DNA from: Macrostomum lignano
Taxonomy: Eukaryota
Assembly (NCBI GenBank): GCA_002269645.1
Contig: NIVC01003622.1
Location: 1-27,424, forward strand
Direction: 5' to 3'
DNA: 27,424 nt
The notes beneath the pieces were generated by a model. That model did no database searches, had not been told where the DNA came from, and worked only from the letters and a program-made list of their open reading frames with translations. This document shows positions 2,750-24,622 of this stretch, piece by piece (the first letter of the stretch is position 1; every line of letters starts with the position of its first letter). A program made the translations under genes and the position numbers.

Positions 2750-2881
2750 ATGGGCAGCTGCATCTCCTCTGTTGGACCGCAATCTCCCGTCAGAGCCACC
2801 GAGCCGCCGGAACCCGCCGCCACCGCCGCCGCCGCCGCTGTCACAGGCAGAGGCCAGTCTAACAAGGGATTTAAGCCGGAG
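2750..2881 (+). CDS. Candidate first coding exon of PDE1 (MGSCISSVGPQ...GFKPE)
   Basis: ATG followed by GC-rich coding-like sequence ending at GAG|GTTCGC, just before a repeat-filled intron. The phase 0 end does not directly match the preferred phase 1 frame of the 3682 exon. Confidence 0.45.
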
Positions 2882-2913
2882 GTTCGCCTTTCTCTACTTT
2901 TGTACATGAATAA

Positions 2914-3255
2914 GTCCGCCTGTCTGTCACTTTTTATGCCTGTCCGTCTCTTGTCCCGCCTGTCTGTCACTTTTTATGCCTGTCCGTCTCTTGTCCCGCC
3001 TGTCTGTCACTTTTTATGTCTGTCCGTCTCTTGTCCCGCCTGTCTGTCACTTTTTATGTCTGTCCGTCTCTTGTCCCGCCTGTCTGTCATTTTTTCTGTC
3101 TGTCTGTCTCTTGTCCCGCCTGTCTGTCACTTTTCTGTCTGTCTGTCTGTCTCTTGTCCCGCCTGTCTGTCACTTTTTCTGTCTTTCTGTCTCTTGTCCC
3201 GCCTGTCTGTCACTTTTCTGTCTGTCTGTCTCTTGTCCCGCCTGTCTGTCACTTT

Positions 3256-3258
<3 letters not shown>
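2914..3258. repeat. About 40-bp minisatellite (gtcccgcctgtctgtcactttttatgtctgtccgtctctt)n
   Basis: Unit starts at 2953 and 2993. Later units vary in CTGT number. Confidence 0.93.
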
Positions 3259-3628
<370 letters not shown>

Positions 3629-3681
3629 GTGCATATTAGCAGTGCTCAGTCAACTCCAATTACCGCATCCCCTCACCGCAG

Positions 3682-3807
3682 GAAAACCAAAAGCCGCCAA
3701 CGCCGCCGCAGCCGCAGCAGCGCAACGGTCAGCTCCCGCAGGCAGCCCCAGCAGCCGCATCGTCGAGGTGAAGCCGGTCCGACGGCCCGCAACACCCCCT
3801 GCTGGAG
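3682..3807 (+). CDS. PDE1: PDE1 N-terminal exon (GKPKAANAAAAAAAQRS...PATPPAG)
   Basis: Acceptor cctcaccgcag|, donor GGAG|gtcggg, 126 nt, phase 1 to 1, joins 4352 in frame. Low-complexity, so no homology support. Confidence 0.55.
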
Positions 3808-6800
3808 GTCGGGCGGCTTTGAATTGCTGAGCTCACCCTGCATCTCACTCTGCTCCAGTCCCACCCTGCATCTCACTCTGCTCCAGTCCCACCCTGCATC
3901 TCACTCTGCTCCAGTCCCACCCTGCATCTCACTCTGCTCCAGTCCCACCCTGCATCTCACTCTGCTCCAGTCCCACCCTGCATCTCACTCTGCTCCAGTC
4001 CCACCCTGCATCTCACTCTGCTCCAGTCCCACCCTGCATCTCACTCTGCTCCAGTCCCACCCTGCATCTCACTCTGCTCCAGTCCCACCCTGCATCTCAC
4101 TCTGCTCCAGTCCCACCCTGCATCTCACTCTGCTCCAGTCCCACCCTGCATCTCACTCTGCTCCAGTCCCACCCTGCATCTCACTCTGCTCCAGTCCCAC
4201 CCTGCATCTCACTCTGCTCCAGTCCCACCCTGCATCTCACTCTGCTCCAGTCCCACCCTGCATCTCACTCTGCTCCAGTCCCACCCTACATCTCACTCTG
4301 CTCCAGTCCCACCCTGCATCCCACTCCCTCCCTCCCTTTGCGAACTTCCAGATTCGAGCTCAAATCGTTCGCTGACGGGGGAGAAAACAAAAAACAACGA
4401 GATGGATGACCAGTCTGAGAAAAACGCAGGTGGGCAAGACAATAAATCCTCAGTTGGGATTTCTAAATCCACATTCTGAATCCCATACCCGCTCCCGCAG
4501 GCTCGGAGCCGCTCAGCGGTCTGATGTACAACAGCCTGCAGAAGGCGCCCAGCACGCAGTACGCCGAGTCAGAGCTCGGCACCGAGAGAATGCCTTCAGT
4601 GGGCACCCCCGAGGCCAGCTTCGCCTGTTCCGTGCGGTGGGTCTACCCTGCTGTCTACCCTTCTGTCTACCCTGCTGCATACCCTGCTGTCTAACTTTCT
4701 TACCATGCTGTCTACCATTCTGTCCACCCTGCTGTCTAGCCTGCTATTTACCATTCTGTCTACCTTGCTGTCTACCCTGCTGCCTACCCTTCTGTCTACC
4801 CTGCTGTCTACCCTGCTGTCTAACTTTCTTACCGTGCTGTCTACCATTCTGTACACCCTGCTGTCTAGCCTGCTATTTACCATTCTGTCTAACTTGCTGT
4901 CTACCCTGCTGCCTATCCTTCTGTCTACCCCGCTGTCTATCCTGCTATCTATCAATCTTTCTATTCTGTTTTTTTTCAACCCTGCCCAGGCAGTTCTCAT
5001 GCTCAAAAACGTACACATTGATTTTTCCATAGTTCAACGCGCGCTTTGCCCTCTTCAGGCTGAAAAAGATTGCCAGGCTTGTGGAAGAAGACACAATCAA
5101 CAAGGAGCTGCTGGTGCAGAACCTTCGGTACGCTGTGCAGGTTCTGGAAGCCGTCTACGAAGATGAGACGAAGTGAGCGATGGATTGTATTGATTTCGGT
5201 TTCATAATCTAACGTAATTTAAGGAAAACAATAAATATGAGAATATGGAATTTTCAGGAAAATCCACTAATCTGGAATGGAGTTTCTTGGAAAATCATCA
5301 AATTGAAATGAGATTTCTAAGAAACTCCCAAATCTGCAATAAGATTTCTAGGAAAATCCCAAAGCCGGAATGGGATTTCTAAGAAAAGACCTAAATCTTT
5401 GAATGGGGTTTCTAGGAAAAACCCTAAATCTGGAATGGGTTTCAATCTCTCAGTCTGGCACCGCAATTTTCACCTGCACCAACTGCAGGCGACTCTGCAA
5501 CGAGGACGATGACCTTCCCGAAGTGTCCCCCAACGAGGTGCCAAGCGAGGTGCGCGACTGGCTGGCCTCCACGTTCACCCGGTCGCAGACTTCGCTGAAG
5601 CAGAACAAGGAGAAGCCGCACTTTCGGAGCGTCGCCAACGCCATCCGAGCGGGCATCATGGTGGAGAGGTGATCCCATCGCCCGAACTCAGCTCAATTAT
5701 CTGTTGCTAGGCTGTTTTAAAGCCGTTTTTACGTAGCCGAATTTTGCCATGACAGGATCTACAGGCGCCTGTCCAGCTCCAGCAGCATCAGCGTGCCACC
5801 CAATGTCCTGCTGCTGCTGAAGGTAGGCCTTGACTTTGTGGTTGCCGCAAATTGACTCTTTCGATATGTGCGCGTAACTGCTCAATGAGCCAATGACGAA
5901 CTGGCTATGTCGTAATGATCAGCCATTGACCAATGATAGTCTCTGAGTCTCTGAGATAGTGAGTCACTGAGAAGGTGAGTCACTGAGAAGGTGGGTCACT
6001 GAGAAGGTGAGACACTGAGAAGGTGAGACACTGAGAAGATGAGACACTGAGAAGGTAAGACACTGAGAAGATGAGTCACTTAGAAGGTGAGTCACTGAGA
6101 AGGTAAGTCACTGAGAAGATGAGTCACTGAGAAGGTGAGTCACTGAGAAGGTGGGTCACTGAGAAGGTGAGACACTGAGAAGATGAGTCACTTAGAAGGT
6201 GAGTCACTGAGAAGGTAAGTCACTGAGAAGATGAGTCACTGAGAAGGTGAGTCACTGAGAAGGTGGGTCACTGAGAAGGTGAGACACTGAGAAGATGAGT
6301 CACTTAGAAGGTGAGACACTGAGGTGAGTCACTGAGAAGGTGAGACACTGAGAAGATGAGTCACTTAGAAGGTGAGACACTGAGAAGGTGAGTCACTGAG
6401 AAGGTGAGACACTGAGAAGATGAGTCACTGAGAAGATGAGTCACTGAGAAGGTGAGTCACTGAGAAGGTGGGTCACTGAGAAGGTGAGACACTGAGAAGA
6501 TGAGTCACTTAGAAGGTGAGACACTGAGAAGGTAAGTCACTGAGAAGATGAGTCACTGAGAAGGTGAGTCACTGAGAAGGTGGGTCACTGAGAAGGTGAG
6601 ACACTGAGAAGATGAGTCACTTAGAAGGTGAGACACTGAGGTGAGTCACTGAGAAGGTGAGACACTGAGAAGATGAGTCACTTAGAAGGTGAGACACTGA
6701 GAAGGTGAGTCACTGAGAAGGTGAGACACTGAGAAGATGAGTCACTGAGAAGATGAGTCACTTAGAAGGTGAGACACTGAGAAGGTAAGTCACTGAGAAG

Positions 6801-9800
6801 GTGAGACACTGAGAAGGTGAGACACTGAGAAGGTGAGTCACTGAGAAGGTGAGTCACTGAGAAGGTGATTCACTGAGAAGGTGAGTCACTGAGAAGGTGA
6901 GACACTGAGAAGGTGAGTCACTGAAAAGCTGAATCACTTAGTAGGTGAGTCACTGAGATAGTCACTGAGAAGGTGAGTCACTGACAACACAGGAAATTTC
7001 TCTTCCCCCTGCTCAGGCCGGCCTGGACGAGTGGTGTTTCGACGTGTTCGAGCTGAACGAAGTGTCGGAGAACCACGCAATGAAGTTTGTGGGCTTCGAG
7101 CTGCTGCACAAGTACGATCTGATCAGCAAGTTCAAGGTAAAGCCAGACTGCACTGTGTACTCCGCTGAGGTCAACAGAAAAAACGCGTAGCCAAAAAACT
7201 TTTAGATAAACTCCAGTGTGCTGGAGAACTTCCTGTACAAGTGCGAGGAAGGTTACAGCAAATGGGGCAACCCGTATCACAACCTGGTTCACGGAGCCGA
7301 TGTGGCCCAGACCTGCCACTTCATCATGCACGACTCGAAGCTTGTGGTGAGTTTGTTGCTATGCGATTGTGCATCAATATCGATGGTTGCTATGCGATTG
7401 TGTATCAATATTGATAGTTGCTATGCGATTGTGTATCAATATCGATGGTTGCTATGCGATTGTGTATCAATATCGATGGTTGCTATGCCATTGTGTATCA
7501 ATATCGATGGTTGCTATGCGATTGTGTATCAATATCGATGGTTGCTATGCGATTGTGTATCAATATCGATGGTTGCTATGCGATTGTGTATCAATATCGA
7601 TAGTTGCTATGCGATTGTGTATCAATATCGATAGTTGCTATGCGATTGTGTATCAATATCGATGGTTGCTATGCGATTGTGTATCAATATCGATGGTTGC
7701 TATGCGATTGTGTATCAATATCGATAGTTGCTATGCGATTGTGTATCAATATCGATGGTTGCTATGCGATTGTGTATCAATATCGATGGTTGCTATGCGA
7801 TTGTGTATCAATATCGATGGTTGCTATGCGATTGTGTATCAATATCGATGGTTGCTATGCGATTGTGTATCAATATCGATGGTTGCTATGCGCTTATGGA
7901 TAAACTTTAGAACTGGCTGACGGACCTGGAGATTTTCGCCACAATAATCGCGGCACTGATCCACGACTACGAGCACACGGGCACCACGAACAATTTTCAC
8001 ATCAACATGAACTCGGATCTGGCGCTGTTGTACAACGACAAAGGCGTGCTAGAGAATTACCACGTGAGCGCAATTTTCACGCTGATGCGAGAGGACGATT
8101 ACAACATCCTGACCGGACTGACCCGAGAGGAGTACAAGTGAGGCAGAACCGGGTGGAATAGCTGCATCGATTGCTAGGGCGTTGCTGTGGTGTTTCTAGG
8201 GTGCTGCTGTGATGTTGCTAGGGCGTTGCTGTGGTGCTGCTAGGGTGTTGCTTTGGCGTTGCTAGGGCGTTGCTGTGGTGTTGTTAGGGCGTTGCTGTGG
8301 TGCTGCTAGGGTGTTGCTTTGGCGTTGCTAGGGCGTTGCTGTGGTGTTGTTAGGGCGATGTTGTGGTGCTGCTAGGGTGTTGCTTTGGCGTTGCTAGGGT
8401 GTTGCTTTGGCGTTGCTAGGGCGTCGCTGTGGTGTTGCTAGGGCGTTGCTGTAATGTGGCTAGGGCGTTGCTGTGGTGTTGCTAGAGCATTTCTATGGTG
8501 TTGCTAGGACATTACTATCGTATTGCTATTGCGTTGCTGTGGCATTGTTAAGACATTCTAACTATTGCGAGTTAAAATTTCGTACTAAAATTTCAGAGAA
8601 TTCCGGGCCCTGGTGATTGACATGGTGCTCAACACCGACATGAGCCTGCACTTTCAGCAGATTAAGAACATGAAACAGCTGCTGTCAATGCCGGAAAAGT
8701 AAGTGGCTTTCTTCAAGTAGTTGGTAGCAACAGTAAACTAATCTTGTCTGGACGCTACTAAGGTGTTGTTACTACTGTACTGCTACAATCGTATTCAACA
8801 GGTATTTTGCCGCTTTATCAAGTGATTGACAACCAATCTCTAGATTCTGTACTTGATGCTGCAGAAGTGGACTTTTGTTACGGAATAAATTTATTAGATA
8901 GCGGATTGCCTTATTAGGCTAATATTTTTGTCCATGGCGTCGTTCTCACACTCACCACCTCATCAGCCAATGGTGTCAATCCCTCACCCACCACCACATC
9001 AGCCAATGGTGTCGATCCCTCACCCACCACCCCATCAGCCAATGGTGTCTATTCATCACCCACCACCCCATCAGCCAATGGCATCGATACTTCACCCACC
9101 ACCCCATCAGCAAATGGCATCGATCACTCACCCACCACCCCATCAGCCAATGGCGTCGATCCTTCACCCACCACCCCATCAGCCTATGGCATCGATCACT
9201 CACCCACCAACCCATCAGCCAATGGCGTCGATCACTCACCCACCACTCCATCAGCCAATGGCATCGATCCTTCACCCACCACCCCATCAGCCAATGGCAT
9301 CGATCCTTCACCCACCACCCCATCAGCCAATGGCGTCGATCCTTCACCCACCACCCCATCAGCCAATGGCGTCGATCACTCAAACACAACCCCATCAGCC
9401 AATGGCATCGATCCCTCACCCACCACCCCATCAGCCAATGGCATCGATCCTTCACCCACCACCCCATCAGCCAATGGCGTCGATCCCTCACCCAGCCAAT
9501 GGCGTCAATCCCTGATCCACAGCCCAGCCAATCGTGTCCCGCCAACCTCTCCCGCCGCAGGGACCCCGATCAGGAGTGGCTGTTCTTCGGAAACGGCTCA
9601 AATGTGATGCGCCCGAGACGCACAATGCTCACTACTTTTCCATGCGGGCGAGTCCACTCAAACTAGAATTTTTGCCCAAAACAGCGGAGCACAAATTCTC
9701 GTTTTAATAGATATATCTTATCTATCTAGCCAATTCACTAGCATTTTGGTTTCAACTACCACTTGATTACGTTCGCTGTCACATTATGTTAGAGCAGAGG

Positions 9801-12800
9801 CTGCAGTGGCCAGAAAACTAGCAAGGAAATTATCTCAGTCTGACTGCTTTTTTATGTTTTAATTTCTTATCGAATACACAGCGTCTACCAGAAGGTGTAA
9901 GTATGACTGATAGCCGTCTGCATGCCAGTTGAGCGTAAGGCAATCCGCTATATGGCCTTGTATTTTTGAGTATAGCAACGCTGAGCGTTACAAATTCTTC
10001 CCTTTCTTGAGTGCACCGCTGCTGGGTTTTTATGGACTTTACGGGTTAGGGTCAGGGTTAGGGTTAGCATTGAAGCTGTACTCGCGGTTGCAATAGAGAA
10101 GTTAGTGAGCTGTAGACAGCATAATAAAATTTACGCTCGCATATGTCGTACTTGGCTGGACCGCCACAAAATACGAGTAGTATATAAAAAACGGCAAATC
10201 GATAAATTAAATACCTAGCATAAATTATACTGGAATTTTATTTATTACTCTACTGACAGTAGAAATATAAGAAAAAGACGCAAAGAAATTATTCAGTAAA
10301 AATATTTCCAAAGTATGTACTGTGCAACTAAACCAATAACTTTTGTCACTACACAACACTTAAGTTTATGGTATATCTATTCTCTTCTCTTTTCTCTTCT
10401 TTTTTTCTCCCCTCTCCACTCTCCCCTCTCTCCTCCTCTCTCCTCTCTCTCCTCTCTCCTCCTCTCTCCTCTCTCTCCTCTCTCCCCTATCTCCTCCTCT
10501 CTCCTCTCTCTTGCCTCTCTCCACTCTCCCCTCTCTCCTCTCTCTCTCTCTCCTCTCTCCTCCTCTCTCCCCTCTCTCCTCTCTCCCCTCTCTCCTCCTC
10601 TCTCCTCTCTCTCCTCTCTTTCTCCTCTCTCTCCTCTCTCTCCTCTCTCCTCCTCTCTCTCTCTCTCCCCTCTCTCCTCTCTCCCCTCTCTCCTCCTCTC
10701 TCCTCTCTCTCCTCTCTCCTCCTCCCTCCTCTCTCTCCTCTCTCCTCCTCTCTCCTCCTCTCTCCTCTCTCTCCCCTCTCCCCTATCTCCTCCTCTCTCC
10801 TCTCTCTTGCCTCTCTCCACTCTCCCCTCTCTCCTCTCCTCTCTCTCTCCCTCTCTCCTCTCTCCCCTCTCTCCTCCTCTCTCCTCCTCTCTCCTCTCTC
10901 TCCCCTCTCTCCTCTCTCCCCTCTCTCCTCCTCTCTCCTCTCTCTCCACTCTCCTCCTCTCTCCTCTCTCTCCTCTCTCCTCCTCTCTGCTCCTCTCTCC
11001 TCTCTCTCCCCTCTCCCCTCTCTCCTCCTCTCTCCTCTCTCTTGCCTCTCTCCTCTCTCTCCTCTCTCCTCCTCTCTTCTCTCTCCTCCTCTCTCATCTC
11101 TCCCCTCTTCTCTTCTCTTATAATCTTTTCTCTCATCCCACCTCTTGCCTATCCTCTCTTCGCTCATCTCTCTCATCTTCTATTCCCTCACCTTTCCAGT
11201 GAGCTGCATTCTCTATCTGGTCCTTGAGGTAAAAAAGTTCCCCGACCTCTGGCTGGAGTTGTGAAATGCAATTTCGATTTGCTGAATAGCTACCGATATG
11301 CTAGGCATACTACTCATTTATCAGATTGTTTTGTTGTAGTGTAGGCCGAGCCTGCAAAGTAGCTTGTCTAGCCGGATGTTGCAGGCCGTCCATGCCAGTC
11401 CGTTTTTACTAACGCCAAAAGGTCAAATTTCATTAGTTTTAGTCCAGTTCAGTTTACAAGTAAACCCGTTTTCATTTTCTACACAATATTTTCTATAATA
11501 TTGCGTTTTTTGGGAGCTAAAAATGCCGCACTCACTACTTATCAGCGTCCGAATCGAAATCGCTGCAGAATTGACAAGGAGAAGGCCCTGGCCCTCATGC
11601 TGCACTGCGCTGACATCAGCCACCCGGGCAAACGCTGGGACTTGCACTACCGATGGACTCTGGGCCTGTTGGAGGAGTTCTTCCGGCAGGTGAGTCCAGG
11701 ATCAAGCACAGATACTAGAATGACTAGATGGGCCACTCAGCATAGCTCGTATTCGCGTTTAATCTACTTTCAGTTCAGTAGTAAGTTAAACGGAAGCATT
11801 TTGATGTATTTTAAAGCCACGGCTACTTTTTATTGGCTCTTACCCCCAGCCCCAGCTTAACCCTCCAACCGCGCCTTTCCACGCTACCCCTAGCCCCGCC
11901 CCAATTTTTATTGCCTTTCTCGAAATTCCAGCCTAAAGCTGCCATGTACATTTCAGTTGACTGGCTAATGTACATTATTGCTGAACCAATTAGCAAACTG
12001 TTTACGCCTGTAAGCTTGGGCTTCTAAACTTATCAGTCATTTCATCTGCCCTTTTTATAAAATAGCTTATGTATACTGAACTGAAAGTAGAAAGCTGTTT
12101 TGCTAAGGATATATGTCTGAGTGGCCCTAAAACTTCGTGATAGATCATGCCCAGCGTCGCTTCCGTTTAAAGCAAAGCATACAAGCAGCCTTCCCTGTTA
12201 GAATGCTCAAATACGATCACATTGCCTGGTACACTCACCGAGATTTAACCGCACCAGGGTGACCGCGAGCGAGCTCTGGACCTGCCCTGCTCGCCCCTGT
12301 GCGACAGAACCGTCACCATGGTGGCCCAGTCGCAAGTTGGTGAGCCGCCGCTTTGAGGGCGTCTTGACGCATGGGGTCTGGTTTGAGGATAGGGATTCTG
12401 GGGTTTGCTACCAACCCCAAGGCCCAGAGAGTGTACATGCCTGATGATTAGACTGTCAGGGCCGCTGTACACCCTGTGTGAGCGAGTGCATGAGTGCTCA
12501 GGAGTCTGCGGAATGGGCAGAATCGCCCCAGCGCTGGTTTTTAGGACGAAGCCCTCCTGCGAATATTTACATTAAATTTTATAATGCTCATTGCAGGATT
12601 CATCGACTTCATCATGGAGCCCAGCTTCAACGTGCTCGGCGACATGCTTGAGAAAATTCTCGGGCCGCTGTTTGAGCAGCAGAGAAAAGCTGGCGGCTCG
12701 GCTGGGCCCGACGATGACGGCTGTGAGCTGGGGTCACGTGACTGGTCATTGTAGGCAACTGTTGTAGGCATCTGTGTGTGACATGCGTGATAGCTGAGTG

Positions 12801-14402
12801 ACATGTGTGATATCTGAGTAACATGTGTGTGATAGCTGAGTGAAATGTGTGATAGCTGAGTGAAATGTGTGTGATAGCTGAGTGAAATGTGTGATAGCTG
12901 AGTGAAATGTGTGTGATAGCTGAGTGACAGGTGTGTTATAGCTGAGTGACATGTGTGATAGCTGAGGGACATGTGTGTGATAGCTGATTGATATGAGTGT
13001 GATAGCTGATTGATATGAGTGTGATAGCTGAGCATGAGTGTGATAGCTGATTGATATGAGTGTGATAGCTGATTGATGAGTGTGATAGCTGATTGATATG
13101 AGTGTGATAGCTGATTGATATGAGTGTGATAGCTGATTGATATGAGTGTGATAGCTGATTGATATGAGTGTGATAGCTGAGTAACATGAGTGTGATAGCT
13201 GATTGATATGAGTGTGATAGCTGATTGATATGAGTGTGATAGCTGAGTAACATGAGTGTGATAGCTGATTGATATGAGTGTGATAGCTGAGAGACATGCA
13301 TGTGATAGCTGAGTGACATGTGTGTGATAGGTTAGCATGCCAGTCACACATGAGTGACACATGAGTGACACATGAGTGACACACGAGTGACATATAAAGA
13401 TCATCTCCCGCTCTGCAGCGGCCAGTGAAAGCGGAAGCCCCAGCATCCGCCGGCCCTGGGCAGACGTCATCAAGGAGAACCGCGCCACCTGGAAGGCCCG
13501 GGCTGAGATCGGTGAGTGATTCGGTGCAGCCGGTGAACAGGTGAAACCAATAGAACAAACAGGAAAATCTGTGAACCGGGGGAACTTGTAAATGAGGAAC
13601 CAACAAATTCGGAGACAACTGTGACTGAGAGAAACCCGTGAACCAGAAAATCCAGTGAACCAGAAAAACCCGTGAACCAGAAAATCCAGTGAACCAGAAA
13701 AACCCGTGAACCAGAAAATCCAGTGAACCAGAAAAACCCGTGAACCAAAAATCCAGTAAACCAGAAAAACCCGTGAACCAGAGAACCTGTGAACCAGAAA
13801 AAACCTGCGAACCAGAAAATTCAGTGAACAAGAAAATCCCGCGAACCAGAAATACCCGTGTACCATAAAATCCTGTGAACCAGAAAAACCCGTGAACCAG
13901 AAAATTCAGAGACCCAGAAATACCCGTGAACAAGAAAATCCAATGAACCAGAAGAACACGTGAACCAGAAAATCCAGTGAACTAGAAAAACCCGTAAACC
14001 GGAAAAACCCGTGAACCAGAAAATCTAGTGAACCAGAAAATCCCGTGAACCAGAAAATCCCGTGAACCAGAGAAACCCGTGAACCAGAGAAACCCGTGAA
14101 CCAGAGAAACCCGTGAACCAGAGAAACTCGTGAACCAGAAAATTTAGTGAACCAGAAAAACATGTGAACCAGAAAATCCAGTGAACCAGAGAAACCCGTG
14201 AACCAGAAAATCTAGTGAACCAGAAAATCCCGTGAACCAGAGAATCCCGTGAACCAGAAAATCCCGTGAACCAGAAAATCCCGTGAACCAGAGAAACCCA
14301 AACACAGAACTAAGCCACTCCTCTCTACTTTCTTGTATTGCAGAAGAGGCGGAGAAAAAGCAACGCGAGGCCGAAGCAGCTGAGAAGGAGGAAGCTGGCT
14401 GA
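3682..14402 (+). CDS. PDE1: Ca2+/calmodulin-dependent 3',5'-cyclic nucleotide phosphodiesterase 1 (multi-exon gene; start exon unresolved)
   Basis: Manually spliced exons 3682-3807, 4352-4429, 4501-4636, 5059-5172, 5489-5668, 5756-5822, 7017-7136, 7206-7346, 7911-8137, 8597-8698, 11569-11689, 12258-12339, 12597-12722, 13419-13511, 14344-14402, all with GT-AG introns and compatible phases. 4501 to stop totals 1568 nt plus 1 carried base = 523 codons. Motifs: VPSEVRDWLASTFTR, EKPHFRSVANAIRAGIMVER, YHNLVHGAD, HDYEHTGTTN, TDMS, HCADISHP, SQVGFIDF. Confidence 0.95.
3834..4320. repeat. 28-bp minisatellite (caccctgcatctcactctgctccagtcc)n, about 17 units
   Basis: Almost perfect; one substitution seen near 4288. 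Confidence 0.98.
4352..4429 (+). CDS. PDE1: PDE1 N-terminal exon (DSSSNRSLTGEK...EKNAG)
   Basis: Acceptor acttccag|, donor GCAG|gtgggc, 78 nt. Only the phase 1 frame is open, and it matches exon 4501. Confidence 0.65.
4501..4636 (+). CDS. PDE1: PDE1 exon (GSEPLSG...PSVGTPEASFACSVR)
   Basis: ctcccgcag| acceptor, CG|gtgggt donor, in frame with 5059. Confidence 0.8.
4641..4950. repeat. Degenerate 12-bp repeat (ctaccctgctgt)n
   Basis: Starts at the splice donor, with an internal duplication of about 130 bp. Confidence 0.9.
5059..5172 (+). CDS. PDE1: PDE1 exon, calmodulin-binding region (RLKKIARLVEE...QNLRYAVQVLEAVYEDETK)
   Basis: ctcttcag| and AA|gtgagc. Resembles the PDE1 segment RLRSLVKQLE...KNLEYAATVLESVYIDETR. 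Confidence 0.92.
5245..5443. repeat. Old degenerate repeat of about 32 bp (ttctaggaaaatccctaaatctggaatgggat-like)
   Basis: About 6 diverged units recognisable from recurring tttcta.gaaaa and aatct.gaatg. Confidence 0.7.
5489..5668 (+). CDS. PDE1: PDE1 exon, PDEase_I N-terminal domain
   Basis: Encodes VPSEVRDWLASTFTR...EKPHFRSVANAIRAGIMVER. aactgcag| and AG|gtgatc. Confidence 0.96.
5756..5822 (+). CDS. PDE1: PDE1 exon (IYRRLSSSSSISVPPNVLLLLK)
   Basis: gacag| and AAG|gtaggc. Continues ...ERIYRR as in PDE1. Confidence 0.92.
5940..6984. repeat. 16-bp minisatellite (cactgagaaggtgagt)n, about 65 units
   Basis: Unit starts at 5965 and 5981. Variants gtaagt, gtgggt, gtgaga, atgagt. Confidence 0.98.
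7017..7136 (+). CDS. PDE1: PDE1 exon (AGLDEWCFDVF...YDLISKFK)
   Basis: ccccctgctcag| and AAG|gtaaag, 40 codons. Contains the PDE W-x-FDVF motif. Confidence 0.95.
7206..7346 (+). CDS. PDE1: PDE1 catalytic exon (GYSKWGNPYHNLVHGADVAQT)
   Basis: tttag| and GTG|gtgagt. Contains the metal-binding YHNxxH motif. Confidence 0.96.
7355..7892. repeat. 31-bp minisatellite (gttgctatgcgattgtgtatcaatatcgatg)n, about 17 units
   Basis: Near-perfect, fills intron 7347-7910. Confidence 0.98.
7911..8137 (+). CDS. PDE1: PDE1 catalytic exon (AALIHDYEHTGTTNNFH...YNDKGVLENYH)
   Basis: PDEase signature HDxxHxGxxN. actttag| and AA|gtgagg. Confidence 0.97.
8172..8540. repeat. Degenerate 22-bp repeat (gttgctagggcgttgctgtggt)n
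   Basis: Periodicity of 22, decays toward the 3' end. Confidence 0.9.
8597..8698 (+). CDS. PDE1: PDE1 catalytic exon (EFRALVIDMVLNTDMSLHFQQIK)
   Basis: tttcag| and AA|gtaagt. Contains TDMS and HFQQIK, typical of PDE1. Confidence 0.96.
8930..9505. repeat. 36-bp minisatellite (ccaatggcatcgatccttcacccaccaccccatcag)n, about 16 units
   Basis: 12-aa periodic pseudo-ORF at 8928-9515. Confidence 0.95.
10043..10067 (+). repeat. Short interstitial telomere-like repeat GGGTTAGGGTCAGGGTTAGGGTTAG
   Basis: Four GGG tracts with TTA/TCA loops. Confidence 0.7.
10380..11200. repeat. Polypyrimidine (CT/CCT) low-complexity tract, about 0.8 kb
   Basis: Almost purine-free on the + strand. Confidence 0.97.
11569..11689 (+). 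CDS. PDE1: PDE1 catalytic exon (IDKEKALALMLHCADISHPGK...EEFFRQ)
   Basis: cgctgcag| and CAG|gtgagt. Confidence 0.97.
11764..12090. mobile_element. MITE-like element with a 17-bp perfect terminal inverted repeat
   Basis: ctactttcagttcagta (11764-11780) is the exact reverse complement of tactgaactgaaagtag (12074-12090). No clear TSD. Confidence 0.5.
12258..12339 (+). CDS. PDE1: PDE1 catalytic exon (GDRERALDLPCSPLCDRTVTMVAQSQV)
   Basis: gcaccag| and G|gtgagc. Includes the invariant Gln region. Confidence 0.96.
12597..12722 (+). CDS. PDE1: PDE1 exon (GFIDFIMEPSFNVLGDMLEKI...)
   Basis: ttgcag| and T|gtgagc. Confidence 0.95.
12773..13393. repeat. About 22-bp minisatellite (gtgtgatagctgattgatatga / gtgtgatagctgagtgacatgt)
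   Basis: Two alternating unit variants filling intron 12723-13418. Confidence 0.95.
13419..13511 (+). CDS. PDE1: PDE1 exon (SASESGSPSIRRPWADVIKENRATWKARAEI)
   Basis: ctctgcag| and G|gtgagt. Contains the PDE ENxxxW motif. Confidence 0.9.
13633..14298. repeat. 18-19-bp minisatellite (ccgtgaaccagaaaatc[c])n
   Basis: Recurring gtgaaccag core. Confidence 0.95.
14344..14402 (+). CDS. PDE1: PDE1 terminal coding exon (EEAEKKQREAEAAEKEEAG*)
   Basis: Long pyrimidine tract plus ttgcag|, in frame, TGA at 14400-14402. Confidence 0.85.
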
Positions 14403-15152
14403 ATTGATGAAGCGACCATCCAATGGCAACCCAAAAAGAGTTCGAAAAGTGAACGCTAGTAGCCACTAACGCACCGCAGTTACATGGAATTCTATTTTAA
14501 AAGGTCCAACTTTGCTTTAAAATGCATTAGGAGTTTGGCTTTTTTCACTTTTAGCACAAACAGCATCAGGTGAGCCTGGCTTCAATCAATCAATGGAAGC
14601 GCATAGACTAAGACACGCACTGAGTATTTAATACGCTCGTAACGCCTGCCTCGGTAATGCATTTTCAAGTGTTGGTCCTGTTGCTAACCAGATTCCTTGT
14701 GTAAGCTGGTTTCTTAGTTACTGGCTGTTAAATTTTCAGATTCGTGTTTGGATAAGAACTCGTCTGGCTTTAGACATGCCCTGTCTGCACTACTGACAGT
14801 AGTTGAAGTCCAAGTTTTTTAAATTATTTTAATGTTGTACCTCGCTCACACAGCGTCCAGTATCCCCAGAAATAGTTACCCACTGCCGAAGCAGAACAAT
14901 TCTTGAAATTATCCTAATGCAAAGAATTCTTAGTACTGTAGTAGTCACCTGAAAATCTGCTTAAATGCATATCCTTTTAAGCCCTCTCTAATTCAGCATG
15001 TAGCCAGAAACTAAGAGTACAAACTTGCTATTTTTTATGAAGCATGAAATATAATATAAGATGCACGATGTCTCGGTTTCCACCGGATTGCGGTAACTCA
15101 GAGCTTTGTTGAGTTCTTATTACTGACCCCTGTTGACTCATCTCTGCTTGTC

Positions 15153-15308
15153 TTGGCGACCCTGGATGATTGGGTGAGGGGGTTGGCGACCCTTGATGAT
15201 TGGGTGAGGGGTTTGGCGACCCTGGATGATTGGATGAGGGGTTTGGCGACCCTGGATGATTGGGTGAGGGGGTTGGCGACCCTGGATGATTGGGTGAGGG
15301 GGTTGGCG
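15153..15308. repeat. 30-bp minisatellite (ggcgaccctggatgattgggtgagggggtt)n, about 5 units
   Basis: Pseudo-ORF LATLDDWVRG repeated 5 times. Confidence 0.95.
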
Positions 15309-15365
15309 CGACTTGGCCACCATGATGACGGTTCTGTCGCACATGGGCGAGCAGGGCAGGTCCAG
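15308..15365 (-). repeat. Inverted copy of PDE1 exon segment 12276-12333
   Basis: The reverse complement matches 55 of 58 nt. The - strand ORF reads LDLPCSPMCDRTVIMVAKS versus the exon's LDLPCSPLCDRTVTMVAQS. Confidence 0.93.
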
Positions 15366-16304
15366 TGGTCTGGCGCGGCGCTCTGACGGGCCCAGGCTCG
15401 ATTCTAAGTGCAGTCGCATTAATTTGGGGCTAAATCTTGGCTCTCTTCTCGTGCAATTAACGCGCTTGAGGGCCAACCTCCAAGGCACAGTGAAGTGTAC
15501 ATGCCTAACGAAAAATAAAGTCAGGGCCGCTGTACACAGCTCCTGTACACTATACACACTGCTCACACTGGGTGTACAGCAGCCCAGGCTTTCTTTTCAT
15601 CAGTCGTGTACACTCTCTGTACCTTGGGGGGGGGGGCTGGCCCTCATAGGAGGGAACCGCCCATGAATTGATTTGCAGGGAAAATGCAAAAACAAAAACC
15701 TATGAAAAATTTCCAGACGCTCCTTTGTTCCTGACCGGAGCTTTGACTCGAAAATTCTTTTTTAAAAACAAACCAATGCTCCGGTTCACATCGCAAAATA
15801 TTCTTCAAAGATCTTCAAAGAAATTCCCAGGGGCGATAGGAGATTAAAAATGCAGCAGCACAGACAGTTTTGTCTCGAATTAAATTCAATAAAATTCTGT
15901 CAATAACAAGCTGACAGTTAATTCACTTCTTTCTTGTTGCAAAACAAAAAAACTGCACCTACTTCTAGTACCAATAACGAAGCAAAAGTAGTCTACAAAG
16001 TTCTATCCGTGACGCAAAACTGTACATTGAGAGATATGCAGATCAGATTTCTCAGGTTAACAAAAATCAACGTAACAAGTTTATTGTAAAAATACAGATT
16101 CACCTTCGATACAATGGAAGTTGTTGATAAGGAGATCCGTTTGATGACGCCACTGGCAGCTGACGAATTGCGTGCAGCAGCGCCTTTCCGGGAAATACAA
16201 TATTTCTCACCCTCATCTCCGTGTTTGCATTTTGCTTCTAGTTGTTCCAACACCTGGAACCTGCACTGAACAGTGTTTGATTAGCAGTAGCGTTTGCGCC
16301 TACG

Positions 16305-18808: not shown

Positions 18809-19153
18809 ATTGACCTCTACACTCCCTCAGGTTCTGAATTCAGCAAAAACTGCAGCGAACCCAGAATGACACTTCCTGGTCATTAACGTGCTCGGAAATT
18901 GCATTGAGAGGATTTAATTAACATCCGACTTTTCCTAAGCCCCCTGATACAGTGGAAACTATTCTTAGTTGACCTTCGGCGCCTTGTTTTGGTACACAAT
19001 ATAGTGAATAGAATGGCACTAAGTTCTTCATAAAGAGGCTTGGCTATCAGAGTATCGCAGTGTGAGATGATACTTGACTGGTGCAGTGTAAAACTGAGAC
19101 GCAATTATATTACTGTGCGAGACATACGCTACATCCACTGTTCCCTCAAATGC

Positions 19154-19462
19154 CACCTGCACCCACACCGCCTGCACCCACACCACCTGCACCCACACCA
19201 CCTGCACCCACACCGCCTGCACCCACACCACCTGCACCCACACCACCTGCACCCACACCACCTGCACCCACACCACCTGCACCCACACCACCTGCACCCA
19301 CACCGCCTGCACCCACACCACCTGCACCCACACCGCCTGCACCCACACCGCCTGCACCCACACCGCCAGCACCCACACCGCCTGCACCCACACCGCCTGC
19401 ACCCACACCGCCAGCACGCACACCACATGCACCCACGCCGCCAGCACTCACACCACCTGCAA
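19154..19462. repeat. 15-bp minisatellite (cacctgcacccacac)n, about 20 units
   Basis: Direct periodicity. Confidence 0.97.
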
Positions 19463-19748: not shown

Positions 19749-19923
19749 CTGTGTTGAGTGGCGATGGTGATGGCTGAGTCTGAGTTATAAGGAACTGCAT
19801 GGGATGTGCGGTGAAATGGGTGCATGGTGTGGGTGCAAGTAGGGTGGGTGCAGGTGGTGTGAATGCAAGGTGGGATAGAGGGTATGGACAAGGATGTAAA
19901 TGGAGAGGATGCTAATAGTTGGG

Positions 19924-20140: not shown

Positions 20141-23061
20141 ATGAAACGTAGAGCCTCCGGGGCTGAAAACAGACGCAAGAAAAAGCTTCGTCTTCTCGAG
20201 GAAAGCGCCAGAAGCACAGTAGGAATTAGCACTTTCCTGAGCAAAACTTCTGGGCATCCTGCTGCTAAATCTGGCGCCCCTGCTGCTGTTGAATCCGGCG
20301 CCCCTGCTGCTGTTGAATCCAGCGCCCCTGCTGCTGTTGAATCCGGCGCCCCTGCTGCTGTTGAATCCGGCGCCCCTGCTGCTGTTGAATCCGGCGCCCC
20401 TGCTGCTGTTGAATCCAGCGCCCCTGCTGCTGTTGAATCCGGCGCCCCTGCTGCTGCTGAATCCGGCGCCCCTGCTGCTGTTGAATCCAGCGCCCCTGCT
20501 GCTGCTGAATCCGGCGCCCCTGCTGCTGTTGAATCCGGCGCCCCTGCTGCTGTTGAATCCGGCGCCCCTGCTGCTGTTGAATCCGGCGCCCCTGCTGCTG
20601 TTGAATCCGGCGCCCCTGCTGCTGTTGAATCCGGCGCCCCTGCTGCTGTTGAATCCGGCGCCCCTGCTGCTGTTGAATCCGGCGCCCCTGCTGCTGTTGA
20701 ATCCGGCGCCCCTGCTGCTGCTGAATCCGGCGCCCCTGCTGCCAGAGCCCATGCTTCTACTGCTGATACTGGCAGGGGAATCTGCATGATCGACTTGGGT
20801 TTGCACGTTGCTGGTGGCCCTCTGAGTGAACACCTGAATGACCACATTCGTCTTAAGCTGCTTGACTCTGCCTGGTCGCCGTCAGCCAACTACTCAATGC
20901 CTTACTCTACGCGCATTGTAAAGGGCAAACCTGAAAAGCGCTATCTAAGACATGAGCACCTGCAGAAGCACAGCTTTCTAGCCTTCTCAGAAGCTCGATC
21001 TGGGCTTTTCTGTCGGTTCTGTGCGCTTTTTGGGCCAGCGTCTGGGGATGTACGCAACCAGCAGCTCGGCTTCCTAGTGTCAAAGCCCTTGAGTAGGTAC
21101 GACCGTCTGTTTGGTGCAAACGGCTGTCACCTCCCATGCAGCAACAGCGTATCACCAAGATGCTATGGCACGCGCGGCCACCTTCAAGCAGCAAGCAGCA
21201 GCTCGCATCGATGTGGTGAAGCAGCTGGACGAAGCGCGGCAACGACAGGCAGCAGAGAATCGAAATCGACTGCGGCCAATTGTGAAGACGCTGTTGCTCT
21301 GTGGAAGACAAAACATTCCACTTCGCGGTCACCGCGACGATGGCCCGCTTTCAAGTGGCAACTCTGACACGAGTGACGACAATTCGATGGTTTCAGGCAG
21401 CGGCAACTTTCGCGCTTTACTGCAGTTTCGTGTTGATGCTGGTGACGAAGCGTTGGAGAAGCATCTCAAGAATTCAGCAGCAAATGCAACGTACATCAGC
21501 AAGACAATTCAAAAGGAGCTCCTCGAAGCCGCTGGTTGCGTGATTCAGGAAACTCTGGCCACCAAAGTCAATGCAGCAAAATGTTTTTCTGTCCTCATGG
21601 ATGAGACGTGTGACAACTCGAAAAAGAAGCAGATGTCAGTTGCTGCATGCTCGGTACGTCGATGCTGACTGCACTCTCAGGGAAGATTTTCTCGGATTTG
21701 CTCATGTGACCGATCAGTCCGGCTCAGCACTCGCCGCTGCATTGTTCAGTTTTCTCGAGAAGTTGGGCATCAACTACCACCTACTCGTAGGTCAAGGCTA
21801 CGATGGAGCCGCTGCAATGCGGGGTGAGTTCAATGGAGTTCAGGCACATCTTCGGCAGAAGTGTCCAGCAGCGTACTAACATTCACTGCTCCAGTCACTG
21901 CCTAAACCTTGCACTCGTTCATGCCTGCAAACTGCCCCCAATTCGTAACGCAATGGGAGTTATAGGAGAAGTAACAAACTTCGTCAATTCATCGGCAAAG
22001 CGGCTTGAGCTCTTTCAAAGAGTTACATGTACAGCAAGTGGCTCGTGCAGAAGCCGTCGGCGGAAACTGCTAACCCTCTGCGATACTCGCTGGGTCGAGC
22101 GGAATGACGCCGTGCTCGTGTTTTCGCAGCTTTTCGCATCAATTGTGGAATTTCTTGATTTCTGCGAATCCGCCTCCGATCGCGATCCAAGAACTGCTGC
22201 CAAGGCGCAGATGCTGAAGGCCGCCTGCACAATGCCGAACTTCATCGTGGCGCTGCATATGATGGGCGAGGCAGTAATCCGGCCTCTGTCCAGCTTCCTT
22301 CAGAAAGTTAGTATCGATTTGTTTACAGCAAGCAAGCACATCGAGAACGTGCGTGTCACGCTGGAAAAGATGCAGGCAGAAGCCAGCACTGCCTTCAAAA
22401 GCATCTGGTCGTCAGCATCCGAAGCTGCAGCTGAAGCGGACGTAGAGCTGTGCATCCCTCGTCGTAGAGGCTGTCAGCAGGGGCGTGGTGCTAGCGAAGA
22501 CACGCCGGAGGAACACTTCCGTGCTGATGTGTACGAGCCATTCCTACAGCACATTCTGTCTCAGTTCCAGCAGCGCTTTGGGGACCAGGCCCAGCATGAT
22601 GCTTTTCTCCACTTAACATGTTTGCTTCCAAAGTACGTCCATTTATACGATGTCAAAGACTTCGAGCCTTTGACAGACTGTCGCAGTTCAGCAGCTTTTT
22701 AGACACCCATGCAGTTGTTAGGGGCGAGTTTGCCTGCTGGAAAAGTATTTGGGAAAGGTCAAAATCTGTGGCTGCAGCCGACACTGCGATTGAGGCGCTG
22801 GCTAACTGCAATGCTGCATTTTTCCCTAACATTTTCGCACTGCTGAAGATTGCTGCAACTTTACCTGTCTCAACTGCAACTGTTGAAAGATCTTTTTCTA
22901 GTTTGCGACGCTTCAAGTCGTATTTGCGTTCTACCATGCAGCAGGACAGACTTGTCAGCCTGGCTCTGTTGCACACCCACCCTGAGGTTGCAGTGACTGC
23001 GGATCAGGTGATTGATCGATTTTGCAGAAGTGGCTCACGCCGTAAAGACTTTGTTATTTGA
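20141..23061 (+). pseudogene. hAT-superfamily transposase (THAP12/P52rIPK- or ZMYM1-like; DUF4371-type plus C-terminal hAT dimerization region), frameshifted
   Basis: Five overlapping ORFs join into one protein with LFCRFC, NIPLRGHRD, GNFRALL, YISKTIQ, FSVLMDET, GQGYDGA, HCSSHCLNL, TRW and ERSFSSLRRFKSYLRSTMQQDRL. Four frame changes near 21128, 21645, 21878 and 22670. Confidence 0.92.
20270..20743 (+). repeat. In-frame 24-bp coding minisatellite (SGAPAAVE)x19.75 in the transposase N-terminus
   Basis: Unit tccggcgcccctgctgctgttgaa, frame-preserving. Confidence 0.98.
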
Positions 23062-23095: not shown

Positions 23096-23971
23096 CTAGC
23101 TATCACTTGCTAGCTATCACAACTAGCTATCACTTGCTAGCTATTACAACTAGCTATCACTTGCTAGCTACCACAACTAGCTATCACAACTAGCTATCAC
23201 TTGCTAGCTATCACTTGCTAGCTATCACAACTAGCTATCACTTGCTAGCTATCACAACTAGCTATCACTTGCTAGCTATCACAACTAGCTATCACTTGCT
23301 AGCTATCACAACTAGCTATCACTTGCTAGCTATCACAACTAGCTATCACTTGCTAGCTATCACAACTAGCCATCACTTGCTAGCTATCACAACTAGCTAT
23401 CACTTGCTAGCTATCACAACTAGCTATCACTTGCTAGCTATCACAACTAGCTATCACTTGCTAGCTATCACAACTAGCTATCACTTGCTAGCTATCACAA
23501 CTAGCTATCACTTGCTAGCTATCACAACTAGCTATCACTTGCTAGCTATCACAACTAGCTATCACTTGCTAGCTATCACAACTAGCTATCACTTGCTAGC
23601 TATCACAACTAGCTATCACTTGCTAGCTATCACAACTAGCCATCACTTGCTAGCTATCACAACTAGCTATCACTTGCTAGCTATCACAACTAGCTATCAC
23701 TTGCTAGCTATCACAACTAGCTATCACTTGCTAGCTATCACAACTAGCTATCACTTGCTAGCTATCACAACTAGCTATCACTTGCTAGCTATCACAACTA
23801 GCTATCACTTGCTAGCTATCACAACTAGCCATCACTTGCTAGCTATCACAACTAGCTATCACTTGCTAGCTATCACAACTAGCTATCACTTGCTACTATC
23901 ACAACTAGCTATCACTTGCTAGCTATCACAACTAGCTATCACTTGCTAGCTATCACAACTAGCTATCACTA
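23096..23971. repeat. 27-bp minisatellite (gctagctatcacaactagctatcactt)n, about 32 units
   Basis: Near-perfect; the unit is a dimer of a ctagctatcac sub-repeat. Confidence 0.98.
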
Positions 23972-24622
23972 CGAGCTGCGCGTGAATTTTTTATAAAGCT
24001 AGCTAAGTTAACAACTGGTCAATAAAGCTTGCATTGCGCGCAATTGCACCTTTTAATAAAGCTAACTATTCACATTTTATAGTCAATATGACAATATGTC
24101 TTTCTGGCTGACATTCAAGTAGTGCTAAACACATCACTTGAGACTTAGCTATTTAATCATTTTTCCGATTTGCTACACGCCTAGGCCTTAGGGCTACTTT
24201 CATTGCAGCTAAATGACAAACTTAAACTACCACACAGCAAGAAATTTACATTTTGTGTAAAGTCAATTAGCCATTTAATTTATATTGCTTCGCATGTCAA
24301 TAATTATCACAAAGGACATTGAGAAGAATATAGCTAAGGACTAAGGTGCTAGGTGCATATGGCGCCCCTCTAGCAGTAGTGCGCCCTTTGTCTGCCTGTC
24401 CGTCCCCACCGAAAGGAATCCTAGATCCGCCACTGCATGACACAAACGGGAGAGAAGCACTAATGATGTTTGCCCATCAAGCCTGCGCCCAGTGTCCGAT
24501 TTCTAAGAAACAGCAAAATCAAAAAGGATCAGATTTGTTTACAAAATTCGAAATCGCTTGGGAAATGGGATAAAATGTTGTTACATAGGAGATCAACTGA
24601 ACATGCGAATTAACTTTTACAC

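What the first reader, a model, noticed from the sequence alone, without database searches (positions are those of the whole stretch)
15308..15365. Antisense copy of a catalytic exon in the gene's own probable 3' UTR
58 bp matching exon segment 12276-12333 (55/58) lies inverted about 900 nt downstream of the PDE1 stop. I found no AATAAA or ATTAAA between the stop (14402) and 15514, so the copy plausibly lies inside the mRNA. The transcript could then fold back into a duplex of about 58 bp over codons next to the substrate-binding Gln, a potential built-in self-regulation route (ADAR editing, endo-siRNA, exon skipping or translational control). The duplicate is directly seen; its transcription and function are inference.
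Basis: partly seen in the sequence, partly recalled or inferred. Interest (0 to 1): 0.75.

Follow-up and report, generated by a model that had tools for sequence, protein, structure and literature searches.

The report
Inverted exon scrap downstream of PDE1
A 58-71 bp backwards copy of a catalytic PDE1 exon really does lie about 900 nt past the stop codon, but it sits among scrambled bits of the neighbouring intron and a minisatellite and looks like a leftover of a DNA copying accident, not a built-in regulator.

Summary
Positions 15308-15365 are the reverse complement of exon bases 12276-12333 (55/58; 0 of 100 shuffles match). Homology may extend to 71 nt.

If both arms are in one RNA, the duplex is strong (-142 kcal/mol; mean pair probability 0.95 in a model mRNA).

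The copy is not an isolated, exon-specific element:
- Within 100-320 nt of it lie two more copies of the intron next to that same exon, one direct and one inverted. Together they form a hairpin of about 75 bp (15463-15645).
- The order and orientation of these pieces do not fit a simple inversion.
- The exon copy butts directly against a 30-nt minisatellite at a shared GCGAC.
- All three differences in the core are pair-breaking and nonsynonymous, and all appear to lie on the copy's side.
- The amount of divergence fits neutral drift.

My reading is a multi-step templated-insertion or fold-back rearrangement scar in a very repeat-rich region. Any dsRNA it forms is probably incidental. A self-regulating function is not excluded, but nothing here supports it. 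No transcript data or close relatives were available.

The parts
12258..12339 (+). Source: 82-nt PDE1 catalytic-domain exon (GDRERALDLPCSPLCDRTVTMVAQSQV-G). Acceptor is cag|GGTGAC and donor is G|GTGAG at 12340.
12276..12333 (+). Exon arm of the inverted repeat (58-nt core; possible extension back to 12263).
15308..15378 (-). Antisense exon copy. The core is 15308-15365 (55/58) and the diverged extension runs to 15378. The splice donor is not retained. The differences from the exon are at 15344, 15325 and 15314.
15153..15308 (.). 30-nt minisatellite (5.2 copies, unit TTGGCGACCCTGGATGATTGGGTGAGGGGG) ending exactly at the exon copy. The junction reads TTGGCG/CGAC, inside a GCGAC shared by the unit and the reverse-complemented exon.
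   Evidence: the unit is unrelated to the source
12349..12508 (+). Source intron segment just downstream of the exon. It is copied twice near the exon copy. Both copies lack about 46-50 nt (12360-12408) that the source has.
15463..15537 (+). Direct copy of intron 12349-12359 plus 12409-12472 (81.5%); left arm of the palindrome. It contains the first AATAAA after the stop.
15537..15645 (-). Inverted copy of intron 12415-12508 (80%) plus the TGAGGGC end; right arm and loop of the palindrome.
15379..15462 (.). Spacer between the exon copy and the palindrome. It has no significant similarity to the upstream exon, the upstream intron or anything else in the window.
14400..14402 (+). TGA stop of the PDE1 reading frame in the spliced model.
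15514..15519 (+). First canonical AATAAA after the stop, 149 nt past the copy's core (15365) and inside the left hairpin arm.

Best explanation
The antisense exon copy is a small templated insertion. It is one piece of an old, multi-step DNA rearrangement involving replication template switching and fold-back, of the MMBIR/FoSTeS or break-repair type. That event pasted short fragments from a 250-bp stretch of the PDE1 gene (the 82-nt exon and the start of the following intron) into the region about 3 kb downstream, in mixed orientation and next to a minisatellite.

Since then the copy has drifted neutrally while the real exon was held constant by selection on the enzyme.

Shown:
- the three homologous fragments, their orientations and their non-collinear order;
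- the junction with the minisatellite;
- the hairpin;
- the divergence figures.

Inferred:
- the mechanism of origin;
- that the copy has no selected function;
- that any dsRNA it forms with the exon, if the transcript reaches 15308, is an incidental by-product.
For: 1. There is more than one fragment, and two are non-coding. Intron 12411-12472 recurs in direct orientation at 15473-15537, and intron 12415-12508 recurs inverted at 15629-15537, within 100-320 nt of the exon copy. No other part of the window shares non-tandem similarity with this region.

2. The order is scrambled. A simple inversion of exon plus intron would put the intron piece to the left of the exon piece. It lies to the right, with a fold-back copy in between.

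3. The two palindrome arms share a gap of about 46-50 nt and shared base states against the source. They therefore descend from one earlier copy, which means at least two steps.

4. The left junction lies exactly at the end of a 30-nt minisatellite, in a GCGAC shared by both partners. Proximity, inverted orientation and junctional microhomology are the published signature of MMBIR templated insertions (PMC8421209).

5. The divergence is neutral-like. All three pairwise identities among the intron copies are about 80%, or roughly 10% per lineage. The exon copy differs at 3/58 (P = 0.13 for 3 or fewer differences at 10.5%) or 8/71 (P = 0.67).

6. The three core differences are all nonsynonymous (L>M, T>I, Q>K). 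The exon keeps the residues seen in other PDE1s at the L and Q positions, and a residue seen in some of them at the T position. In RNA all three are C:U or C:A mismatches, with no wobble-preserving change.

7. About half the window is minisatellite arrays, and a degenerate hAT transposon lies 5 kb further on. This is an unstable, repeat-rich setting.
Against: - The copy covers almost exactly the exon (12255/12263 to 12333 of 12258-12339). No flanking intron is attached to it, which is a coincidence under a purely DNA-level model.
- Its 95% core identity is higher than the 80% of the intron pieces. The test against neutrality is weak at this size (P = 0.06-0.13), so mild constraint or gene conversion cannot be excluded.
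- No canonical poly(A) signal separates the stop from the copy, and the predicted duplex is very stable. A biological effect is therefore physically plausible.
- The pre-insertion sequence is unknown, so microhomology can be judged at one junction only.
- The template lies 3 kb away, farther than the 100 bp or less searched for in PMC8421209.
Confidence: 0.6

Rival explanations
1. Incidental but active dsRNA. The copy arose as a scar, but it lies inside the PDE1 3' UTR. The mRNA folds back into a 58-bp duplex with three mismatches (loop about 1.2 kb). It is then edited by ADAR, diced, retained in the nucleus or poorly translated to some degree, without the element having been selected for this.
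For: There is no AATAAA or ATTAAA from the stop to 15514. The duplex scores -142 kcal/mol, and 55/58 positions have pair probability above 0.9 in the model mRNA. Duplexes of this length are within the range of known ADAR substrates, where exon-complementary elements act over hundreds of nt or more (PMC3479170, PMC5654063). The exon arm holds 8 adenosines whose editing would recode D, R, T, M and Q codons (read from the sequence).
Against: - There is no transcript evidence.
- Weak AATATA signals at 15048 and 15053 could end the mRNA before the copy.
- Ribosomes would unwind a duplex that involves coding sequence.
- Heavy editing of catalytic codons should be harmful, yet the copy has persisted through about 5-11% divergence.
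Confidence: 0.2
2. Selected self-regulation element. The antisense copy is kept because pairing with the catalytic exon tunes PDE1 output through site-selective editing, endo-siRNA production, skipping of the 82-nt exon (a frameshift) or translational control.
For: The evidence is the same physical plausibility as in the rival above. In addition, the core identity (95%) is higher than that of the neighbouring intron copies (80%). The copy also coincides almost exactly with the exon.
Against: - The identity excess is explained by selection on the exon alone (P = 0.06-0.13).
- All three differences break pairs and none is compensatory or wobble.
- The copy is accompanied by scrambled intron fragments and a minisatellite junction that serve no such purpose.
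- The exon pairing and the intron pairing would cross each other (a pseudoknot), so there is no coherent designed structure.
- No inverted repeat overlaps the homologous exon in 80 distant PDE1 loci.
Confidence: 0.08
3. Mobile-element cargo. The palindrome at 15463-15645 is a MITE-like or foldback element, and the intron piece at 12349-12508 is another partial copy. The exon fragment was captured or carried along by it.
For: The hairpin is long and stable on both strands: -89 kcal/mol (z -6.0) and -100 kcal/mol (z -8.9). All three arm copies are equidistant at about 80%. The window contains transposon remains.
Against: - No target-site duplication is seen at the palindrome ends (read).
- There are no further copies in 27 kb, and no Rfam family matches.
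- The source copy matches one arm and runs through the loop up to the inner end of the other arm. This fits a fold-back of a local copy better than a separate insertion.
- Two independent insertions next to the exon and next to its copy would be an unlikely coincidence.
Confidence: 0.07
4. RNA-mediated origin. The copy is a reverse-transcribed fragment of spliced or partly spliced PDE1 RNA, which would explain why it matches the exon only.
For: The homology is confined to the exon. Alignment to the spliced mRNA extends 4 nt further (CCG-CAG) than alignment to genomic DNA, a score difference of 2.
Against: The 100 nt next to the copy show no significant similarity to the upstream exon (P = 0.08) or the upstream intron (P = 0.29). 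No downstream-exon sequence follows, since the minisatellite starts there. There is no poly(A) tract. Intron-derived pieces lie alongside.
Confidence: 0.03
5. Assembly artefact, that is, a chimeric or fold-back read assembled into the contig.
For: Repeat-rich sequence is hard to assemble.
Against: The copies have diverged by substitutions and indels (95% and 80%). An artefact would be identical to its template.
Confidence: 0.02

Closest known systems
MMBIR/FoSTeS-type templated insertions and fold-back inverted duplications (e.g. PMC8421209; PMC3907307)
   Same: A short segment is copied from a nearby template in inverted orientation. Several segments from one neighbourhood are joined in an order that no single inversion explains. 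A fold-back palindrome is present, and one junction shows shared bases (GCGAC).
   Different: The template is 3 kb away, not within about 100 bp. The event is ancient (about 10% drift per lineage), so the junctions are blurred and the original target sequence is unknown. One junction is with a minisatellite.
ADAR editing-site complementary sequences and editing inducer elements (GRIA2 Q/R ECS; the Gabra-3 intronic hairpin, PMC3479170; PMC5654063)
   Same: A sequence elsewhere in the same transcription unit is complementary to a coding exon and could form a long duplex over functionally critical codons.
   Different: Known ECS elements are mostly intronic, conserved about as well as exons, and form imperfect duplexes that direct editing to specific sites. 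Here the element would be in the 3' UTR, is a near-perfect 58-mer that would favour promiscuous editing, shows no sign of conservation, and has no editing evidence.
Hairpin-RNA/endo-siRNA loci, pseudogene-antisense siRNA sources and young plant miRNA genes born by inverted duplication of their target (from my own knowledge, not checked in the library)
   Same: An inverted partial copy of a gene is able to form dsRNA with the parent sequence, and a separate long hairpin is derived from the same gene.
   Different: Those loci are usually separate transcription units and are defined by small-RNA output. Here the complementary arm is in cis in the same putative mRNA. The true hairpin (15463-15645) is intron-derived and would not target the mature mRNA.
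Inverted-repeat Alu pairs in 3' UTRs (from my own knowledge)
   Same: An intramolecular dsRNA involving the 3' UTR could cause hyper-editing or nuclear retention.
   Different: In that case both arms are transposon copies within the UTR. Here one arm is a coding exon.

Membership tests
Templated-insertion / fold-back complex rearrangement (MMBIR-like) | The inserted segment is a copy of a nearby template, often inverted. | tested here: met
   55/58 inverted match, with the template 2974 nt away.
Templated-insertion / fold-back complex rearrangement (MMBIR-like) | There are several template switches: multiple fragments from one neighbourhood in non-collinear order or orientation. | tested here: met
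   An exon piece (inverted), an intron piece (direct) and an intron piece (inverted). The order is incompatible with one inversion, and the two arms share a derived gap.
Templated-insertion / fold-back complex rearrangement (MMBIR-like) | Microhomology is present at the breakpoint junctions. | tested here: inconclusive
   The left junction, TTGGCG/CGAC, lies in a GCGAC shared by the minisatellite unit and the reverse-complemented exon. The other junctions are blurred and the pre-insertion sequence is unknown.
ADAR editing-site complementary sequence (ECS) | It is complementary to an exon and gives a stable duplex. | tested here: met
   -142 kcal/mol; mean pair probability 0.95 over 58 positions in the model mRNA.
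ADAR editing-site complementary sequence (ECS) | It is co-transcribed with the exon in one RNA. | not testable with these tools
   There is only indirect evidence: no AATAAA/ATTAAA before 15514, but AATATA at 15048 and 15053. No RNA data are available.
ADAR editing-site complementary sequence (ECS) | A-to-I editing is observed at the paired exon. | not testable with these tools
   No cDNA or RNA-seq data are available.
ADAR editing-site complementary sequence (ECS) | The complementary element and its pairing are evolutionarily conserved. | tested here: inconclusive
   No close relative was found: protein identity is at most 80% in 80 metagenome loci, and window ORFs are not on record. None of the 80 loci has an inverted repeat overlapping the homologous exon. 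Within the window, all 3 differences break pairing.
hpRNA / endo-siRNA source locus | It has a long inverted repeat able to form dsRNA. | tested here: met
   The exon:copy duplex and the 15463-15645 hairpin, z -6.0 and -8.9.
hpRNA / endo-siRNA source locus | Small RNAs of about 21-24 nt map to the arms. | not testable with these tools
   No small-RNA data are available. Rfam gives no match at gathering thresholds.
Processed (retro) copy of mRNA | An exon-exon junction or neighbouring exon sequence is adjacent to the copy, or a poly(A) tail is present. | tested here: not met
   The flank is not significantly similar to the upstream exon (P = 0.08). No downstream exon or A-tract is present.
MITE / foldback transposon carrying host fragments | It has terminal inverted repeats with a target-site duplication and multiple genomic copies. 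| tested here: inconclusive
   Inverted arms are present. No target-site duplication is seen and there are no extra copies in the window. Genome-wide copy number cannot be tested.

The most novel reading that the evidence does not exclude
The PDE1 mRNA carries, in its own 3' UTR, an antisense copy of the exon next to its purine-binding glutamine. The resulting CDS-3' UTR duplex is used as an autoregulatory switch, acting through ADAR hyper-editing or recoding of catalytic residues, Dicer-dependent self-silencing, or skipping of the 82-nt exon. This would be an 'ECS in the UTR' born from a rearrangement scar and then co-opted.
Probability: 0.08. Interest if true: 0.7.

Novelty: new member of a known kind. 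Interest (0 to 1): 0.3.

Why it matters
As a scar, it is a tidy natural example of how template-switching repair scatters short gene fragments nearby, and of how such fragments could supply raw material for exon-complementary RNA elements.

It would matter more if the copy proves to be transcribed with the exon. A 58-bp duplex over catalytic codons of a Ca2+/calmodulin phosphodiesterase would then be a ready-made case for studying how cells tolerate or exploit self-complementary mRNAs.

Nothing found here raises it above an ordinary neutral rearrangement.

Tried and rejected
- **Minisatellite origin.** I tested whether the 30-nt minisatellite unit derives from the exon or its donor region. It does not: local score 16 against a shuffle mean of 14.9.
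- **Retrocopy origin.** I looked for an exon-exon junction or upstream-exon sequence beside the copy. Nothing significant turned up.
- **Spacer homology.** I compared the 15379-15472 spacer with the source spacer 12334-12410. Only an 11-nt collinear CGC(T)TTGAGGG match appeared; it is suggestive and not significant on its own.
- **Other PDE1 fragments.** A word-7 blastn of 14403-16300 against the window found none. A 13/13 inverted match, 14841-14853 against 12474-12486, is at chance level (E about 1).
- **Rfam.** A scan of the whole window at gathering thresholds gave 0 matches.
- **Species and orthologues.** All of these failed to identify the species or provide a usable orthologue:
  - The protein search gave a best identity of 65-75%.
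  - Exact look-up of two window ORFs found nothing on record.
  - The metagenome scan returned 80 PDE1 loci, all distant.
  - The hAT search gave at most 34% identity.
- **Minus-strand ORF.** The ORF at 15138-15566 runs through the copy and the minisatellite. It has no Pfam match and the copy retains no splice donor, so I rejected it as a gene.

Full report
**Observation**

The inverted match is real and far beyond chance. Bases 12276-12333 on the + strand match the reverse complement of 15308-15365 at 55 of 58 positions (blastn E 2e-19 within the window). A pattern search allowing three mismatches finds only these two sites, and none of 100 dinucleotide-preserving shuffles gives a second site. 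Ungapped extension reaches 12263-12333 against 15308-15378, 71 nt at 89%. The added 13 nt match at only 8/13, so the 58-nt core is certain and the extension only plausible.

**Gene context**

The window carries the 3' half of a calcium/calmodulin-dependent phosphodiesterase (PDE1) gene on the + strand. Conserved motifs locate exons at about 7218-7330, 8025-8138, 8592-8696, 11567-11689, 12258-12339, 12597-12722 and 13419-13511.

Joining 11567-11689 | 12258-12339 | 12597-12722 | 13419-13511 | 14344-14402 at consensus splice sites gives one uninterrupted frame. It reads ...EEFFRQGDRERALDLPCSPLCDRTVTMVAQSQVGFIDFIMEPSF...RRPWADVIKENRATWKARAEIEEAEKKQREAEAAEKEEAG*. The stop is TGA at 14400-14402. The best solved-structure match is human PDE1B (E 5e-39).

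The source of the copy is therefore the 82-nt exon 12258-12339. The copied stretch ends at the first base of the CAA codon for the Gln in SQVGF, which aligns with AQSQIGF of PDE1B. From my own knowledge of PDE structures, this is the invariant purine-binding glutamine (Gln421 in PDE1B; that residue name occurs in PDE1B papers, which I did not read).

- No AATAAA or ATTAAA lies between 14403 and 15513.
- The first AATAAA is at 15514.
- Weak AATATA variants lie at 15048 and 15053.
- Further canonical signals follow at 15843, 15879 and 15888.

**What else is there**

The exon copy is not alone. The intron immediately downstream of the source exon is also represented near the copy, twice:
- 12411-12472 matches 15473-15537 in direct orientation (81.5%).
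- 12415-12508 matches 15629-15537 in inverted orientation (80%).

Together these form a near-palindrome, 15463-15645. As RNA it folds into a hairpin of about 75 bp on either strand: -89.1 kcal/mol (z -6.0) on the + strand and -100.3 kcal/mol (z -8.9) on the - strand.

A three-way alignment shows that both arms lack about 46-50 nt that the source has (12360-12408). They also share base states that differ from the source, for example GAAAAG-AAAG against GATTAG-ACTG. The arms therefore descend from one earlier copy that was later folded back.

On the + strand the order is: minisatellite, inverted exon piece, 84-nt unrelated spacer, direct intron piece, inverted intron piece. A single inversion of exon plus intron would place the intron piece to the left of the exon piece, which is not what is seen. 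At least three joins are needed.

On its left side the exon copy abuts the last unit of a 30-nt minisatellite (15153-15308, 5.2 copies). The join, TTGGCG/CGAC, lies in a GCGAC found in both the repeat unit and the reverse-complemented exon. The unit itself is unrelated to the source.

Nothing else in 14403-16300 resembles any part of the gene, and these are the only non-tandem repeats in the whole window.

**Divergence**

The three intron-derived copies are about 80% identical in every pairing, which is roughly 10% change per lineage. The real exon is held constant by selection, so under neutrality the exon copy should differ from it by roughly 10-12%.

Observed values are 3/58 and 8/71:

| Stretch | Differences | Assumed rate | Probability of that few or fewer |
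|---|---|---|---|
| 58-nt core | 3 | 10.5% | 0.13 |
| 58-nt core | 3 | 12.5% | 0.06 |
| 71 nt with extension | 8 | 10.5% | 0.67 |

There is thus no significant excess of conservation.

The three core differences are all nonsynonymous in the exon's frame: CTG>ATG (L>M), ACC>ATC (T>I) and CAG>AAG (Q>K). The exon retains the residues seen in other PDE1s at the L and Q positions. At the T position PDE1s vary, and the exon's T is one of the residues seen there. The changes therefore appear to be on the copy's side. In an RNA duplex they would be C:U, C:A and C:U mismatches at 12297/15344, 12316/15325 and 12327/15314. None is of the wobble-preserving kind expected if pairing were maintained. Three events are too few for a formal test, but they give no support to constraint.

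**RNA-level plausibility**

If both arms are in one RNA, the duplex is thermodynamically dominant. duplexfold of the arms gives -142 kcal/mol. In a 1.6-kb model of the spliced mRNA ending at 15545, the 58 positions have a mean pair probability of 0.95 (55 are above 0.9), with a loop of 1189 nt.

The exon arm contains eight adenosines. Their deamination would recode D, R, T, M and Q codons (read from the sequence). Skipping the 82-nt exon would shift the frame.

Several points count against a working structure:
- The exon:copy helix and the possible intron:15537-15629 helix cross each other, so they could not both form as nested helices.
- Ribosomes would open a duplex that involves coding sequence.
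- The weak AATATA signals could end the mRNA before the copy.
- No transcript, editing or small-RNA data are available here, so this part remains inference.

**Comparative evidence**

I could not find the organism or any close relative:
- The protein database gives at most 65-75% identity to the PDE1 exons.
- Two window ORFs are not on record.
- A metagenome scan returned 80 PDE1 loci at 40-80% amino-acid identity.
- The hAT transposase has relatives only at 30-34% identity.

In those 80 loci, no inverted repeat of 40 nt or more overlaps the homologous exon. An antisense exon copy is therefore not a general PDE1 feature. However, the loci are too distant, and often too short, to say anything about this lineage. 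Rfam has no match anywhere in the window.

**Interpretation**

The anatomy has five features:
- several short fragments from one 250-bp neighbourhood;
- mixed orientation and non-collinear order;
- a fold-back palindrome;
- a junction with shared bases;
- a template a few kb away.

This is the anatomy of replication- or repair-based template switching and fold-back events. The published MMBIR templated-insertion signature is an insertion near its template, in inverted orientation, flanked by microhomology (PMC8421209). Fold-back inverted duplications are described in PMC3907307.

The setting fits. By my sum of the non-overlapping arrays, about 13.6 of 27.4 kb are minisatellite arrays with unrelated units. 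A degenerate hAT transposon lies at 20141-23061.

I therefore read the copy as an old, neutrally decaying rearrangement scar (confidence about 0.6). The main rival is that the scar is nevertheless transcribed in the 3' UTR and forms dsRNA with incidental consequences (about 0.2). A selected self-regulatory role (about 0.08) is not excluded, but nothing found here favours it.

One oddity remains. The copy coincides almost exactly with the exon, yet there is no evidence of an RNA-mediated origin.

**Comparison with known systems**

It would work like an ADAR editing-site complementary sequence or an endo-siRNA inverted duplicate if it were transcribed. The defining features of those families are co-transcription, editing or small RNAs, and conservation. 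These are untestable here or inconclusive. It meets the testable features of templated-insertion rearrangements. I classify it as a new member of a known kind and score interest at 0.3.

Noticed in passing
whole window (e.g. 65-1788, 5944-6984, 7355-7892, 8934-9494, 12787-13330, 13635-14292, 23096-23970, 24619-26290): About half the window (roughly 13.6 of 27.4 kb, my sum of the non-overlapping TRF arrays) is minisatellite arrays with periods of 8-36 nt. Each array has its own unrelated unit, and nearly every PDE1 intron carries one. This density is unusual.
   Followed up: partly
window 20141-23061 (+): A degenerate hAT-family transposon lies here. DUF4371 (E 2e-6) and the hAT C-terminal dimerisation domain (E 2.6e-10) fall in different reading frames. 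A 24-nt minisatellite (20259-20742) sits inside the first ORF. The nearest database relatives are only 30-34% identical, e.g. oyster P52rIPK-like proteins.
   Followed up: partly
window 15463-15645: An imperfect hairpin of about 75 bp is built from two copies of PDE1 intron sequence. It is stable on both strands (z -6.0 and -8.9), and the first AATAAA after the stop (15514) lies in its left arm. It could mask that signal or act as a hairpin-RNA precursor.
   Followed up: partly
window 19143-19360 vs 19817-19882: Inverted copies of the 15-nt minisatellite unit CCACCTGCACCCACA lie about 500 nt apart. This is a second local inverted repeat, made of tandem units.
   Followed up: no
window 14567-14575: A consensus-like splice donor, CAG|GTGAGC, lies 165 nt after the stop codon. 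This leaves open a 3' UTR intron or an alternative 3' exon structure.
   Followed up: no
window 2750-4375 (+): A long ORF starts MGSCISSVGPQSP... and then runs into TGTC and 28-nt repeats. The start could be an upstream coding exon, or the ORF may simply be a repeat artefact.
   Followed up: no
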